NCBI GenBank assembly: GCA_038496445.1
Contig: JALMLS010000564.1
Coordinates: forward strand, 310,001 to 374,000
Length of the DNA: 64,000 nucleotides
Direction: 5' to 3'
Source of the DNA: Trichosphaerium sp. ATCC 40318
Lineage: Eukaryota; Protista; Tubulinea
Below are positions 6,582 to 62,286 of the stretch, piece by piece (positions within the stretch are counted from its first letter, which is position 1; every line of letters begins with the position of its first letter). Below the pieces are notes generated by a model. That model was not told the DNA's origin and did not search any database. It saw only the letters and a list, made by a program, of their open reading frames with translations. The position numbers and the translations under genes are program-made.

Positions 6582-7646
6582 ATGAAGCCCCTCAAGCTCG
6601 CTATCAATTGTTATACACTTAACAAACGACAAACCTTACTTATCATAGCAACTACAGCTGTGCTAACCGCTTTTATAGTATATTATAATATAACAACATT
6701 TCAAGCGGTTCCATTTGCCACCATAAATTCTAAAGCACCACGATATTGTTACATGTCGTATTTGGGATCTGAAGACTATATTATAGATGCAATGGTATCA
6801 GGTTATTCTCTGAGTAAGGTGAGAAAGTATCCACACCATCTTTATGGCCCAGCAGACGTTCTTTCAAAATTACCAAAAGAAGCAAATGAGTTTTTTACAT
6901 CCATAAATGACATAGAATTATGGAAGGAATACAACGGCTCAGCGATAGCTAGACCTGCTGTATGGACACGAGTACTTCTATATGGTATTTTTGATGGTGT
7001 TTACGACAAGTGTTTGTTGATAGACATCGATACTGTCACAATTGGAGATCTTGATATTAGCTTCAATCTCGAGACTCCAGCAGGTATGATAGAGTATGAA
7101 AACGTGACCATAAATTGTGGTTTGGTATGGTTCCAACCTTCAAAAAAGTTACAATACAGCCTGGTATCGTATGCTAAAGAACATGCAAATGAGGGGTTGT
7201 ACTCAGACACACAAACTGGTGATCAGTGGTTACTCAATAAGGTTATTAAGAAATGGACAAGACTAGCACCTGAAGGTGTTGTGGTTGATGCTAGATTTAT
7301 GCAATTTCAAGTTTATCAGACTGGTCTTCGAAATGGAGAAGCTGCAGTCATTCATTATATTGGTAGCCCGAAACCGTCAAAGGCAATAGATAGTCTAAGA
7401 ATTGTTAGTTTTCAACATTGGTGGATGTTTTATTTTGAAATGTTAAGTACTTATCCTCATCTTAAGAACACTGTGTATGATTTAAAAAAAATCTATGGGA
7501 ATAATGATGTTACTGTTATGTTTTGGAGAAGTGTTCCGTATGAGGCTGTATATACAAAACAAGTGCCTGAATCAAAGGTACTAAAGAATGATGTTCTCAA
7601 ATTCAATAAGGATATTTCACTAGCATACAACCCATTTCATGAATAA
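6582..7646 (+). CDS. Glycosyltransferase family 8 (glycogenin-like) type II membrane protein, intronless
   Basis: 354-aa ORF with an N-terminal TM anchor, a DxD motif (LLIDIDT), 'NCGLVWFQPS', 'GDQWLLN' and 'IHYIGSPKP'. Confidence 0.85.
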   Translation: MKPLKLAINCYTLNKRQTLLIIATTAVLTAFIVYYNITTFQAVPFATINSKAPRYCYMSYLGSEDYIIDAMVSGYSLSKVRKYPHHLYGPADVLSKLPKEANEFFTSINDIELWKEYNGSAIARPAVWTRVLLYGIFDGVYDKCLLIDIDTVTIGDLDISFNLETPAGMIEYENVTINCGLVWFQPSKKLQYSLVSYAKEHANEGLYSDTQTGDQWLLNKVIKKWTRLAPEGVVVDARFMQFQVYQTGLRNGEAAVIHYIGSPKPSKAIDSLRIVSFQHWWMFYFEMLSTYPHLKNTVYDLKKIYGNNDVTVMFWRSVPYEAVYTKQVPESKVLKNDVLKFNKDISLAYNPFHE

Positions 7647-57111: not shown

Positions 57112-58675
57112 CTAGTCACTAATTACATCATCGCTGTCATCTGTATCTCGTAAATCTTCTTTAAGTTCTTCTAATTCATCAAATTCTTCGCTACCTGAAA
57201 GAACTTCTATTGTAATACCAACATCCTCTACTTTATTTTTATCGCCTTCTAACGATTTGTCTTCCTCTGCCTCAGTAGTAGCCGTATCGGCTGTTTCCGT
57301 TGTTTGTGAGGGAGTAGCAGTGCTTACACTGCCTGTTGGAGTCCTACGAACAGGTGTTTTGCTACTTTCCATTAGAAGTCGTCAAGAGCAGCTAATCCGT
57401 ACCCAAATGTTCTAGGACTTGCACTAGGACTGGAATCATATGATGCAGGTGTTTTACTAAAGTCACCAAACTTACTACGCCACCATCCACTGAAAAAGTT
57501 GGAGTAAGAAAAAAAATTGTTACATTTTTTCAAATGCTTTTTTGAAGTTCCTTGCGTCGTACCTTGTGTCACGATGTAATTGTTGTCCAGTGCTTAGTAG
57601 ATTCTTTATAGCACCTGCTAGTTGTTGCATAGAATGAGAAAATTTTTTATCAATCTCATTGTCAGGTTCGCCTAAAAAGGAAACGAAAGTTAATGATTGC
57701 AGAAAAACTCGAGGCAGTTTCGATGGACTTAATTTTTGCTTTTAACGTACCAAAACAAACCATCTTGGCGTAACGAACAAACAAAATAGCGTTATCTGTC
57801 ACATTCAAAGCAAGCCTTAATAACTCACTTTGGAGTCTACTTAGGCTTACTTGACCTATTTTAATACGATACAGCTGTAGTGCTGTGTCTTTAACGAACT
57901 TTACAAGTTCTACGATTTTTTTCGCCTTAGCGGCAAAGTCCTCGCCGCTAGGCTCCTTTACTGTAAGGGATCGCATTTTGAGAGCATTTGCAACAAGGAA
58001 TTTCGCATTTGTACGCAATGTTAAGAAGTATTGCTCAACAAGCTCGTATACCTAGTATAAACATGAGAAGTAAATTCTGGTTGTGTCATATTGCGTTTGT
58101 TTCGGACTTGCCTCATCGGGTTGCCTGTACTGACCAAATACTGAAATAGTGTGCCTACCTGGAATGTCCGACGGCTTAATTGGCGCTGTTTGCGATCGTT
58201 TGTGCCTTCGATAGCAAAAGTTAGCAATAAGCTATATCAGGTGTTTAACTGGGTATTTCATGGCGTACAAGCGTCTTATATCTGGGTACGCGTGTGTTTC
58301 ACGTATGCGCACAGAGCCACCAAATTGTGCTGCCATGCTCGGTTTAACATGAACACGAGGGCTACCAGTCGCCAGCGACAAGCGCCCAACTGGTGAATCG
58401 GGTGAAGGATAACGTTTGTAGTTTCCACCACGTAAATTTAAACCTATATTATTTGGTTACAAAGATACGTACTGCGGTTGTAAGTACTACGTACCATATT
58501 TCTTTGCTTTGCGGTTTTTTTTGTCTCTACTGCTTCCAGACCTAGAAGAACGTGGTGATCCTCTAGGAGATGAACGTCGCGGCGATGATTTGTCACTTGA
58601 GGATTTGTCTTTAGGTTTCTTTTTTTTACGCCAGCTAAAGGCGAACACCGTCTTCTTTTTATCCTTAGAGGACAT
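57112..58675 (-). CDS. Hypothetical protein (basic/Ser-rich N-terminus, helical core, acidic tail), multi-exon
   Basis: Consistently spliceable exons. No family recognised. Confidence 0.6.
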
Positions 58676-58764
58676 ACCACAACTAAAAAAGCAATATAAA
58701 ACAATTTAAATAAGCCAAACGTCTAAGTAACAGTGTGACCTACCTGATTAGAAAAACGGCGCTG

Positions 58765-61700
58765 ATGGCAACAACGGCGAACAAGCGATTGCCTGTGACT
58801 GTTTTGTCTGGTTTTCTTGGTTCTGGTAAAGTAAGCTTTTCAAAGATGACACCTTCGCGGTTTCTGTGCTTAAGAACCATTAGACAACACTGTTAAAACA
58901 TGTTTTACAAAATAGAGAAGGTTTGCGAGTTGCAGTCATTGTAAATGACATGAGTGAATGTAAGTGAAGTTATTCTACGCTTCTCACGTAGTGTAGTGAA
59001 CATTGACGCGAAATTTGTGACTGGTGGAGAATTCAGCCTCTCGACGGTACTACACGGTAACGCGTTAACAATAAGCTCATTGTACGCAAAGGTTGAAGAG
59101 AAGTTGGTACCAATGCAGAATGGGTGTATATGTTGCACTCTACGTGAAGATCTACTAGAAGAGATAACGAAACTAGCCAAACTAAACAAATTTGATTACC
59201 TCTTGATCGAATCGACAGGTACCAGTCCAATATAACACTGAACCGCTACAATAGATGTGCTGACGCGTAGGCTAGGCATATCAGAGCCGCTACCCGTTGC
59301 AGAGTCGTTTACATTTGACATTCCACTTCAAAATGACAAGGGAGAAGCTGTAACGCACAGCTTATCTGAGATTGCGAAACTGGATTCAATGGTAACTGTA
59401 GTCGATGCTGCAAGGTTCTTTGAGCACTTGAACACCATTTCTAGTATTCAGAATCATTTTGGAGAATCGAATGGTGTTGAAGATAAAAGGTCTGTTGTAC
59501 ATTTATTAATGGATCAAGTCGAGTTTGCAACACATATCATTATAAATAAACTTGACCTTGTCACTGATGAACAAGTAAAAGAAATAGAGGTAGCTACTGG
59601 CTAATAGTACAAAAGTTAACTGTTACCCTTAGGCCACGTGTCATCGATTAAATCCAAGTGCCAAAATTATCAAAACAGAATTTTCAAATGTGTCTCCTTC
59701 CATTATTCTGAATACAGGTAGCATGCCTCTCCTTACTGTTCTCTTAAATTTGACAGTCGTTTTAAGATGCGTTTGATTTTAATAAAGCCAAAAGCCACTC
59801 TGGCTGGCTAAAAGAGGCACGAGGTGAACATGTTCCAGAGACCGAGGTAAAACAAATTTGCGTTTATCAATTATTGACTGACTGTATTTTAGGAATATGG
59901 TATTTCTTCATTTGTTTACAAAAGAACGCGACCATTCCATCCTCAAAGACTTTTGGTTAGTTTCATAACTTGAACAAACATATTTGAATATTTCTAAGAC
60001 AACGTTTAGAGCATCATAGAGCAAGGAATACCAAATGTTATTCGCTCGAAAGGAACAATTTGGTTAGCATCAGGTATTTCCTGTTTTTTTCTTACTTCTT
60101 GTAACCAACATTTCTTTAGAAGAAACTGCACGTATAGATTGGAATGGTGCTGGAAGTATGCTGAAAAACATTCAAATACATACTTAATCGTCGTAGAACT
60201 CATAGACATAACAATTAACCCAGCTTTCGCTCAAAACATCGAAAATAATCCATACAGTGAAGTACGACTTTACTTTACACCTATCTCCTAACGCTAACAA
60301 TATCAAAGCTAGTAATAATCGGAGCTAAAATGGATAAGACTAAGGTTGAAGCTATTATAGATGCTTGCTTGGTCGCACCTGAAGAGAACGAGCAAGGATT
60401 TGATTTGTGGAAAACATTTGACAATCCGCTTGAACAATACTATCAGGTATCTTTTGTTGATCTCTTGATTGCCTTATTAATTGAACTTTGTTTAAAGGAC
60501 TCAGAACTCTCTCGCCAAGACATACAATCATTCAGGACTGCAGCTATTGATTCATGGTTGCCTCAGTTTAAACATTTGACTTTTAAGACAAAGCAAGTTA
60601 CTTTACCAAATAGTTTTGTTGAATACCTCGGACAAGATGGCATAGTGCTTCAAGATGATGATAACGTAGATTTAAAGACAAAAAAAGGCACTGAGATAGC
60701 AATAACTCAACCAGTTTGCTTACATTGGCACTAGACAAGTGGCAAGATGCTTTAAATGCATCTGATGATGATGAAGACTGGGAGAAGGCTAAAGATTCTG
60801 TGCGTAGTTGGTCTATTCTACGCGATAATTAACGTGCGCTAGGAACAAATTGCTGAGACTCCACAATTCCCAGCGTTGCAGCAAGAGGTTAACAACGTTA
60901 TTCAGGAGCTTGGTGGCAAAGTCTTTCCAAAGCTTACTTGGAGTTCACCAAAAGTGAGTTTAATTTACGCCGTAACACTTCTAAACAGTACTCTAGGATA
61001 CTATATGGATGAGAGGTAGTCTTGAATGCAAGAACTTTACAGCAATATTGCTTCTACTGAAATCGTCTGATAACATTGCAAAGGATTTTGACTGGTAGCC
61101 ATTACTTGTAGTTATTTACAAGTCTTAAGTTTTTAATAGGATTGAAGAGGTTTACAAATCGGAAGAAAAGAAATATATACTCCATTTGCGACAATACTAC
61201 AAGATAAACACCTCCATGGAGTTTAGATGCTTTGTGGTTAATAACGTCCTAAAAGGTAATCACATGTATAACGTTGGTATGCTTAAACACACATTAGGCG
61301 TATGCCAACGTCATATTACATCACAGTTCGGATTTCTTGAGAAAATGAAAGAGCGAGTAGTCATACTTGCACAAAACTACTTTGACAAGGAAATCAGCGG
61401 AAAATACAAAGATTCTTCCTGTATCCACCTGCAAGCACAAACTTTTTTTCCTTTCTTTAGTCAACAAGGCCATTCACTCGACTTGCCTTTTTTTATGTTT
61501 GCCTTAATTCGAGTTAAGTTATTTTCGATATTTATATTGAGAATGGCGATAGAGTTATCTTGGTTGATTTTTCTCCTTTCCACAAACTAGTAGATACATT
61601 ATTATTCAGTCATGATGAACTATTTAAAAGCCACGGTTCATCGTCATCAAAACAGTGTGAAATACGGTTAACAACTGATGAACGCATAGGATTGAATGTA

Positions 61701-61869
61701 GCGAGAATGGGTACTTCTTTTTTCTGTTTCACTTGGGCGTCGTTAACGATGTTTCAAAAAAGTTTACTTATTGTCTGTTGAAGGTGTACCACATGACTTG
61801 TTAGATATGTCAAGTGGATCTGCTATTGAAGAATTTGTAGAAAAGGCCAAGGCTGGTTTTTTTGATTGA
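58765..61869 (+). CDS. Fusion protein: COG0523/CobW-family zinc metallochaperone GTPase + Cdc123 (D123) ATP-grasp domain, multi-exon
   Basis: N-half: 'LPVTVLSGFLGSGK|TT', 'AVIVNDMSE', 'NGCICCTLREDL', 'IESTG|ISEP', 'NKLD', 'RPFHPQRL', 'RSKG.IWLA'. C-half: 'SWLPQF...TFKT..V.LP..FVEYL..DG', 'LGGKVFPKLTWSSPKD', 'LLLKSSD', 'MEFRCFV', 'VCQR', 'LVDFSPF'. Confidence 0.88.
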
Positions 61870-62286
61870 GGTTGTCGCTCGTTTGTACAATAAACAAAGC
61901 TGTATTGAGCTGTTTCTAGTTGTTGTCCATAGCATTAGGTGGTTTGCGTCTCTCAACTAATTAAATCGCTTCACGTGAAAGTTAAAAGTTCCTTATTGTC
62001 CTAGGTGAAACGTTCATTTCAATGCATTTAACGCTTAAAAAACGAACAGCTACAAAGAACAAAAAACAACCATCCGAAAATCCGAAAGACGAATACCTAC
62101 GCCAGCGCCTGATACTAACGGGTAGTTGCAAGAAAAAAACAAGAGTAGCAACAGTTAAAAACCCCTCACGTAAGGTAAGAACGGATAAAGAGAAACGTAG
62201 AAAAATAATAAACTGACAAAGCACTGTGCAATCAAAGTACTTCAAAAAGCAAATTATACATAATATAGTTTTATTCGCAAAAGAGA

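What the first reader, a model, noticed from the sequence alone, without database searches (positions are those of the whole stretch)
58765..61869. Zinc-metallochaperone GTPase (COG0523/CobW) fused in frame to the eIF2 assembly factor Cdc123
The CobW_C region ends '...WKTFDNPLEQYYQ'. The frame stays open, with or without the phase-0 intron at ~60447-60497, into 'DSELSRQDIQSFRTAAIDSWLPQFKHLTFKT...', the Cdc123 N-terminus. There is no stop, no new Met and no intergenic gap. Established: COG0523 proteins (CxCC motif, here CICC) deliver zinc to client proteins, Cdc123 assembles eIF2 by binding eIF2-gamma, and eIF2-beta has a zinc finger. Inference: a Rosetta-stone fusion coupling zinc delivery or zinc status to eIF2 assembly and translation initiation. 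I do not know this architecture from described proteins.
Basis: partly seen in the sequence, partly recalled or inferred. Interest (0 to 1): 0.72.

Follow-up and report, generated by a model that had tools for sequence, protein, structure and literature searches.

The report
Zinc-chaperone GTPase fused to Cdc123
One intron-rich gene of a probable marine amoeba reads straight from a complete zinc-chaperone GTPase into a complete Cdc123 (the factor that assembles eIF2). I found no description of this combination, and it hints that eIF2 may be a zinc-chaperone client, but no RNA data could be obtained to prove a single product.

Summary
Positions 58765-61869 (+) fit one 20-exon, all GT-AG gene of 705 codons.

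- **GTPase half:** exons 1-12 encode a complete ZigA-type COG0523 GTPase with P-loop, CICC, ESTG, NKLD, PETEEY and RSKG motifs.
- **Cdc123 half:** exons 13-20 encode a complete classical Cdc123.
- **Junction:** it is a typical 51-nt phase-0 intron (60447-60497). The frame stays open whether or not it is spliced. The GTPase half has no stop codon, and the Cdc123 half has no in-frame ATG before exon 16.
- **Comparison with stand-alone genes:** 70 of 72 Cdc123 loci from metagenomes carry their own Met 4-53 residues before the conserved Trp. None of the 80 loci fetched has a CobW gene nearby.
- **Relatives and papers:** I found no fused relative in a 1.84-billion-protein search and no paper naming both families.
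- **Not ZNG1-like:** the GTPase half lacks the N-terminal MAP1-binding extension that characterises ZNG1.

The scan noted the same fusion before on another piece of this genome (s1-393499). I could not check that note.

Weak points: no RNA run was listed, no related species shows the fusion, and this genome is full of reported fusions. I put a real single fused gene at about 0.75. Zinc delivery to eIF2 is an inference, at about 0.4 overall. I class it as a new variant of known kinds, with interest 0.5.

The parts
58765..61869 (+). Whole fused gene: 20 exons, 705 codons plus TGA
   Evidence: Phase-checked exon model, all introns GT-AG
58765..60446 (+). COG0523 (ZigA-type) half, exons 1-12, 388 codons
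   Evidence: Pfam cobW and CobW_C. NCBIfam NF038288 matched collinearly over positions 1-389 of 390 across the exons. Exon identities to bacterial ZigA are 40-100%, best hits 50-92%.
58810..58889 (+). P-loop GFLGSGK|TT, split by intron 1
59125..59136 (+). CxCC metal-binding motif (CICC)
59209..59277 (+). Walker B / G3 motif ESTG, split by intron 4
59545..59556 (+). G4 motif NKLD
59835..59898 (+). PETE|EY motif of COG0523 cluster 1, split by intron 7
   Evidence: The motif is defined in PMC13001444.
60043..60054 (+). RxKG (RSKG), the arginine-finger motif of the C-terminal domain
   Evidence: The motif is defined in PMC13001444.
60447..60497 (+). Junction intron: 51 nt, phase 0, no in-frame stop, no ATG
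   Evidence: Its donor has the best leave-one-out score of the 19 introns (8.8 bits). Its acceptor is weak (0.6 bits) but within the gene's range.
60498..61869 (+). Classical Cdc123 (D123) half, exons 13-20, 317 codons
   Evidence: Pfam D123 positions 1-277 of 300, collinear, about 179 bits summed over exons. Identity to animal and fungal Cdc123 is 30-71% by exon.
60924..60953 (+). FPKL...SSPK: the two basic residues of the R2K ATP-grasp clade
   Evidence: The features are defined in PMC4431377.
61219..61236 (+). EFRCFV: the conserved Arg of the kinase-like domain
61524..61580 (+). FDIY Asp and DFSPF (DxN motif with Asn replaced by Ser)
   Evidence: The Ser variant occurs in 8 of about 120 classical homologues.
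61889..61894 (+). AATAAA 20 nt after the stop codon
   Evidence: This is weak evidence, because the same hexamer also occurs inside exons 5 and 7.

Best explanation
This is one real gene that makes a single polypeptide of about 705 residues. A ZigA-type COG0523 zinc-chaperone GTPase is tethered by about ten residues or fewer to the N-terminus of the classical eIF2 assembly factor Cdc123. The GTPase module has no client-binding N-terminal extension of its own. In my reading, the Cdc123 module serves as its client adaptor. Cdc123 holds unassembled eIF2-gamma, with eIF2-beta present in the intermediate. The tethered GTPase then uses its CxCC site and GTP hydrolysis to load zinc into the four-cysteine zinc-binding domain of eIF2-beta, or to make assembly depend on zinc supply. 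Zinc is scarce in sea water, which would give this a use. Shown here: the fused reading frame, the completeness of both modules and the intact motifs. Inferred: a single transcript and protein, and every functional step. My odds are about 0.75 for a real fused product and about 0.5 for the eIF2 and zinc coupling given that.
For: - **Frame and exon model:** the frame is continuous and the 20-exon model is consistent.
- **GTPase end:** the COG0523 half ends at position 389 of the 390-position ZigA model, five residues before the junction.
- **Cdc123 start:** the Cdc123 half begins 5-6 residues before the point where stand-alone homologues have their Met.
- **Own start codons elsewhere:** 70 of 72 stand-alone Cdc123 loci have their own Met, and the window has none.
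- **Junction intron:** it has the gene's best donor score and a typical length.
- **Motifs:** all COG0523 motifs are intact, including RxKG and PETEEY. The Cdc123 catalytic residues are kept.
- **No extension:** only 8 residues precede the start of the ZigA profile. In ZNG1 that extension binds MAP1 (PMC10642216).
- **Zinc in eIF2-beta:** its zinc-binding domain has four conserved cysteines and is needed for beta-gamma contact (PMC11230868).
- **Second locus:** a second locus with the same fusion was noted in this genome (s1-393499, unchecked).
Against: - No RNA run was listed, so there is no transcript evidence.
- No fused relative appeared in the 1.84-billion-protein search with a junction-spanning query, among the top 120 Cdc123 hits, or at 80 metagenomic Cdc123 loci.
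- Earlier notes report very many fusions in this genome, including other Cdc123-family fusions, so neighbouring genes may fuse here without a functional link.
- No paper links COG0523 or ZNG1 to Cdc123 or eIF2.
- The junction acceptor is weak.
- The C-terminal domain of the GTPase half is about 22 residues shorter than in ZigA, and exons 10-11 show no detectable similarity.
Confidence: 0.4

Rival explanations
1. The fusion is real but functionally neutral. Two neighbouring genes in a very compact genome merged when the stop codon, spacer and start codon were lost or became an intron. The two modules work independently: Cdc123 on eIF2, and the GTPase on unrelated zinc clients.
For: Intergenic spacers here are tiny; for example, 89 nt separate this gene's ATG from a divergent ORF. 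210 earlier notes on this genome match the word fusion. Cdc123-family modules were noted fused to many different partners. No other organism shows this pairing. The insect Su(var)3-9/eIF2-gamma gene fusion is described as joining functionally unrelated genes (PMC1435931, abstract).
Against: The linker is very short and lies exactly at the module boundaries. The GTPase half lacks any other client-binding extension. A second locus with the same fusion is reported (unchecked).
Confidence: 0.33
2. The locus gives two separate products through transcript processing that the DNA does not reveal. Examples are an internal promoter with translation from ATG 60330, an alternative acceptor 7 nt downstream that gives the GTPase a short frameshifted tail and a stop, or cleavage of the polyprotein.
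For: There is no RNA evidence either way. A CAG acceptor ending at 60504 would shift to a frame that stops about 25 codons later. ATG 60330 is in frame 39 codons before the junction.
Against: The GTPase half has no stop in the main frame whether the intron is spliced or retained. None of the 19 modelled acceptors is CAG. There is no AATAAA or ATTAAA between 59782 and 61888. A Cdc123 started at 60330 would carry part of the CobW_C domain.
Confidence: 0.15
3. This is an assembly artefact or a decaying extra copy. The junction could be a mis-join or a small deletion introduced by assembly or polishing, or this copy could be a non-functional duplicate of separate genes located elsewhere.
For: No independent assembly or read set could be consulted: no run was listed, and the exact junction ORF is not on record. 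A second related locus exists in the genome.
Against: The window has no N. All 20 exons are intact, with no frameshift or stop, and all motifs are kept. The join falls exactly at both module boundaries inside a normal intron. The same fusion on another piece argues against a local mis-join.
Confidence: 0.07

Closest known systems
ZigA-type COG0523 zinc metallochaperone GTPases (NCBIfam NF038288; Acinetobacter ZigA, sequence-similarity cluster 1)
   Same: The match to the ZigA model is collinear over positions 1-389 of 390. Exon identity to bacterial ZigA proteins is 40-100%. P-loop, CxCC, ESTG, NKxD, PETEEY and RxKG are all present.
   Different: It is a eukaryotic gene with 11 introns in this half. 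The per-exon scores sum to about 316 bits against a 600-bit equivalog cut-off. The C-terminal domain is about 22 residues shorter. A Cdc123 module follows instead of a free C-terminal tail.
ZNG1 (CBWD, yeast Zng1): the eukaryotic cytosolic zinc chaperone for methionine aminopeptidase 1
   Same: Both are COG0523 GTPases with a CxCC motif in a eukaryotic cytosol-type gene. ZNG1's known client also belongs to the translation machinery (PMC10642216).
   Different: ZNG1 has a flexible N-terminal extension that binds the MAP1 zinc finger. This protein has only 8 residues before the G-domain core. Orthology to ZNG1 was not tested, because the session held no ZNG1 reference sequence.
Classical Cdc123 (Pfam D123), the ATP-grasp assembly factor of eIF2
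   Same: The D123 match is collinear. The conserved Lys, second basic residue, Arg, Asp and DxN-type motif are present, and so are the typical N- and C-terminal regions.
   Different: It has no start codon of its own, and the N-terminus is covalently joined to a GTPase. The Asn of DxN is Ser, a minority natural variant seen in 8 of about 120 homologues.
Other COG0523 proteins joined to partner-binding parts or tied to translation
   Same: Examples are a nuclear CobW/WW-domain factor in Chlamydomonas (PMC12891040, title) and the ribosome-hibernation-factor-recruiting GTPase MRF (NF047431, weak hit). Both show that this family can gain targeting modules and can act on the translation apparatus.
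   Different: They have different partners. None involves Cdc123 or eIF2.

Membership tests
COG0523 (G3E P-loop GTPase metallochaperones) | G1 P-loop, G3 (ExxG) and G4 (NKxD) motifs | tested here: met
   GSGKTT, ESTG and NKLD are present. Pfam cobW hits on exons 4-5.
COG0523 (G3E P-loop GTPase metallochaperones) | CxCC metal-binding motif between switch I and Walker B | tested here: met
   CICC at 59125-59136
COG0523 (G3E P-loop GTPase metallochaperones) | C-terminal domain carrying the invariant RxKG motif | tested here: met
   RSKG at 60043-60054. CobW_C hits on exons 8, 9 and 12. The motif is defined in PMC13001444.
ZigA / COG0523 cluster 1 | PETEEY motif | tested here: met
   PETE ends exon 7 and EY starts exon 8. 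The motif is defined in PMC13001444.
ZigA / COG0523 cluster 1 | Whole-protein score above the NF038288 equivalog cut-off (600 bits) | tested here: inconclusive
Only exons were scored. They sum to about 316 bits over profile positions 1-389.
ZNG1 | Flexible N-terminal extension that binds the zinc finger of methionine aminopeptidase 1 | tested here: not met
   Only 8 residues precede the start of the ZigA profile. An in-frame stop lies upstream of the ATG, and a divergent ORF starts 89 nt away. The feature is described in PMC10642216.
ZNG1 | Placement inside the ZNG1 clade in a phylogeny | not tested
Classical Cdc123 (D123, R2K.1 ATP-grasp) | Collinear D123 domain | tested here: met
   Profile positions 1-36, 76-100, 101-133, 147-178, 181-218 and 221-277 of 300, in exons 13 and 15-19
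Classical Cdc123 (D123, R2K.1 ATP-grasp) | Catalytic set: strand-2 Lys, second Lys/Arg, Arg of the kinase-like domain, Asp, DxN | tested here: met
   Lys in FPKL, SSPK, EFRCFV and FDIY are present. DFSPF has Asp, but Ser replaces Asn; polar substitutions there are noted in PMC4431377 and occur in 8 of about 120 homologues.
Classical Cdc123 (D123, R2K.1 ATP-grasp) | Classical orthologue rather than the fast-evolving amoeba, Legionella or giant-virus type | tested here: inconclusive
   Identity to animal and fungal Cdc123 is 30-71% by exon, and the N- and C-terminal regions are typical. No second-type sequences were available for a tree. The genome carries several other Cdc123-family genes.
Classical Cdc123 (D123, R2K.1 ATP-grasp) | Binds eIF2-gamma domain III and promotes alpha-gamma assembly | not testable with these tools
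   This needs binding or complementation assays.

The most novel reading that the evidence does not exclude
eIF2 is a genuine client of COG0523/ZNG-type zinc chaperones. [quoted passage not shown] It would also be a direct route from zinc supply to translation initiation.
Probability: 0.15. Interest if true: 0.8.

Novelty: new variant of a known kind. Interest (0 to 1): 0.5.

Why it matters
Few clients of COG0523 zinc chaperones are known. In the eukaryote papers read here, the only identified client is methionine aminopeptidase 1. A natural fusion to the eIF2 assembly factor nominates eIF2, whose beta subunit needs a four-cysteine zinc domain to contact gamma, as a second client related to translation. 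The idea can be tested in yeast or human cells with existing zng1 and cdc123 tools under zinc limitation. If the fusion is only a neutral merger of neighbouring genes, it still shows how easily this compact amoeba genome turns gene spacers into introns.

Tried and rejected
- **Exact look-up of the junction ORF:** not on record.
- **Word search with a 354-residue intronless ORF to identify the organism:** no hit.
- **Junction-spanning HMMER search of 1.84 billion proteins:** 13 hits. Two were spurious repeat proteins and one had no aligned stretch. The other ten were stand-alone CobW tails or Cdc123 N-termini.
- **ESM Atlas search:** only weak CobW_C clusters.
- **Cdc123 word search:** the top 120 hits all have D123 alone, but the length limit (534 residues) excludes fusions.
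- **CobW word search with P0008:** bacterial ZigA and diatom proteins, none with D123, length limit 429 residues.
- **Window-biased profile for a longer-range search:** MAFFT scattered the exon fragments, so I dropped it.
- **First metagenome scan with the N-terminal alignment:** The FPKL-block alignment worked.
- **Long open frames upstream of Cdc123 in L062, L067, L068 and L073:** chance stop-free stretches in DNA of 68-71% G+C, not fusions.
- **Poly(A) hexamers:** uninformative, because AATAAA also occurs inside exons.
- **Supplementary gene table of the Trichosphaerium genome paper:** truncated in the library and does not list this gene.
- **PDB sequence search with exon 5:** no hit.

Full report
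**What is in the sequence**

The stretch 58765-61869 on the + strand carries short exons separated by short GT-AG introns. I built an exon model by eye and checked it exon by exon with phase arithmetic. It has 20 exons, 19 introns of 37-98 nt (median 46), 705 codons and a TGA at 61867-69, with no internal stop. No joined protein was translated, saved or searched. Exon DNA was pooled in memory only once, for a G+C count.

Exon-by-exon family scans are collinear. Pfam cobW and CobW_C fall on exons 4-12. D123 profile positions 1-277 of 300 fall on exons 13 and 15-19.

**The junction**

- **Where the GTPase half ends.** Exon 12 matches the last 41 positions of NCBI's ZigA model and ends at position 389 of 390, five residues before the splice donor.
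- **Where the Cdc123 half begins.** In an alignment with ten stand-alone Cdc123 N-termini, the start Met of several homologues (P0012, P0013, P0032) aligns 5-6 residues after the splice acceptor.
- **So the two modules meet end to end.** About ten residues or fewer lie between them.
- **The intron looks normal.** It is 51 nt and 27% G+C. It has the best leave-one-out donor score of the 19 introns (8.8 bits). Its acceptor is weak (0.6 bits) but within range, since six of the 19 score 1.2 or less.
- **Retention would not break the frame.** The intron is in frame and has no stop. The same is true of the 45-nt intron 3.
- **No separate stop or start.** The GTPase half has no stop codon in either reading. 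The first in-frame ATG of the Cdc123 half is in exon 16, well inside the conserved core. The nearest upstream in-frame ATG (60330) lies inside the CobW_C domain.
- **No poly(A) hexamer nearby.** No AATAAA or ATTAAA lies between 59782 and 61888. One follows the final stop by 20 nt, but the hexamer also occurs inside exons, so this is weak evidence.

**Comparison with stand-alone genes**

A metagenome scan with the FPKL block returned 80 Cdc123 loci. In 72 of them I could place the N-terminal exon.

- 70 of the 72 have an in-frame Met 4-53 residues before the conserved Trp, most often 13 residues. The other two run off their contigs.
- Four loci have very long open frames upstream. These are chance stop-free stretches in DNA of 68-71% G+C.
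- None of the 80 loci holds any CobW-like sequence, and about 26 of them have at least 2.5 kb of upstream DNA.

**Search for the same fusion elsewhere**

- A junction-spanning query (60309-60665) scored against 1.84 billion representative proteins gave 13 hits. Two were repeat proteins matched by chance, and one had no aligned stretch. The other ten were stand-alone CobW tails with their own stops or stand-alone Cdc123 N-termini with their own Met.
- A fused relative as similar as those hits would have matched on both sides and ranked first, so none that close is in that library. More distant fusions could have been missed.
- The length-limited word searches showed only single-family proteins, but they could not see proteins of about 700 residues.
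- No paper in the library names Cdc123 together with COG0523 or CobW. The two papers that name both ZNG1 and eIF2 do not connect them, judging by their titles and abstracts.
- The main comparative paper on the CDC123 family makes no mention of a GTPase or zinc.

**What kind of GTPase**

- The half matches the ZigA model far better than CobW, MRF or YjiA-type models.
- It is 40-100% identical, exon by exon, to bacterial ZigA proteins. It is collinear with a 426-residue ZigA from residue 10 to 397.
- It keeps every motif that a recent preprint treats as essential: the G motifs, CxCC, PETEEY (cluster 1) and the RxKG arginine finger of the C-terminal domain.
- Eleven spliceosomal introns show that it is a resident eukaryotic gene, not contamination.
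- ZNG1 proteins of yeast, animals and plants use a flexible N-terminal extension to bind the zinc finger of methionine aminopeptidase 1. This protein has no such extension: eight residues precede the core, an in-frame stop lies upstream, and a divergent ORF starts 89 nt away. I therefore do not file it as ZNG1.
- The stretch between the RxKG strand and the last strand of the C-terminal domain is about 22 residues shorter than in ZigA. Exons 10-11 have no detectable similarity.

**What kind of Cdc123**

- The half carries the residues that define the clade: the Lys in FPKL, the second basic residue (SSPK), the Arg in EFRCFV, the Asp in FDIY, and DFSPF.
- In DFSPF the usual Asn is Ser, a minority variant found in 8 of about 120 classical homologues.
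- Identity to animal and fungal Cdc123 is 30-71% by exon, and both termini are typical.
- This points to the classical eIF2 assembly factor rather than the fast-evolving amoeba, Legionella or giant-virus type described. I could not build a tree to prove it.

**Context**

- Earlier notes of this scan call the organism a marine amoeba, Trichosphaerium.
- The window's 37.9% G+C and dense short introns agree with the published Trichosphaerium sp. draft: 37.69% G+C and 8.7 introns per gene, assembled from Illumina, Nanopore and PacBio reads. The identification remains unproven.
- The scan's notes report very many fusion genes in this genome. They include several other Cdc123-family fusions and a second locus, on another piece, described as COG0523/ZNG1 fused in frame to CDC123 (s1-393499).
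- I could not read that second locus. If it is real, it argues against a local mis-assembly.

**How it most likely works**

*Shown:* one open frame, two complete modules and intact motifs.

*Inferred:* a single protein in which Cdc123 acts as the client adaptor for a zinc chaperone that has none of its own. The supporting facts from the literature are these.

- Cdc123 binds unassembled eIF2-gamma, and eIF2-beta is present in Cdc123 complexes.
- An N-terminal GST fusion of Cdc123 still binds its partner.
- eIF2-beta needs its four-cysteine zinc-binding domain to contact the gamma G-domain.

A tethered CxCC GTPase could load that site, or could make assembly depend on zinc supply. That would make sense in zinc-poor sea water.

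My odds:

| Reading | Odds |
|---|---|
| Real fused product | about 0.75 |
| Zinc and eIF2 coupling, given a real fused product | about 0.5 |
| Neutral merger of neighbouring genes | about 0.33 |
| Separate products through unseen RNA processing | about 0.15 |
| Assembly artefact or decaying copy | about 0.07 |

**Verdict**

This is a new domain combination of two known families, seen so far in one lineage only and without transcript evidence. Interest is 0.5.

Noticed in passing
window 59047-59091: Intron 3 of the same gene (45 nt) is also in frame and free of stops. If retained, it would insert 15 residues just before the CxCC region.
   Followed up: partly
window 58487-58764: A divergent ORF on the minus strand, rich in Arg, Ser and Lys, starts at 58675. 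That is only 89 nt from this gene's ATG, so the shared promoter region is very short.
   Followed up: no
window 6582-7646: A 354-residue intronless ORF has no homologue in the word-based protein search. It may be an orphan gene.
   Followed up: partly
window 60120-60261: Exons 10-11 of the GTPase C-terminal domain show no detectable similarity to ZigA, and the domain is about 22 residues shorter. An alternative in-frame acceptor 9 nt downstream of the exon 11 acceptor is also possible.
   Followed up: partly
same genome, other pieces (notes s1-393413, s1-397145, s1-409586, s1-400902, s1-390947, s1-406926): Earlier first-reader notes list Cdc123/R2K ATP-grasp modules fused to a legumain plus a 2OG oxygenase, a gamma-glutamylcyclotransferase, PTH2, a RhoGEF and a WH2 peptide. 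This family seems to have expanded and been recombined in this amoeba.
   Followed up: no
Trichosphaerium genome paper, Table S3 (PMC10521059): Gene model TRSP20351.t1 is listed as a 'cell division cycle 123 protein' with a mimivirus (Moumouvirus) as the likely donor. That is the second, virus-type branch of the family, distinct from the gene studied here.
   Followed up: no
L062, L067, L068, L073 (metagenome loci): Stop-free frames of 200-520 codons run upstream of Cdc123 in contigs of 68-71% G+C. They look like low-complexity chance ORFs, not fusions.
   Followed up: partly
P0008 / P0145: The closest relative of this gene's CobW tail is a diatom-type protein, 74% identical to a Nitzschia 'P47K' protein. 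That protein is itself about 50% identical to bacterial ZigA, so ZigA-type chaperones occur in several marine protists.
   Followed up: partly
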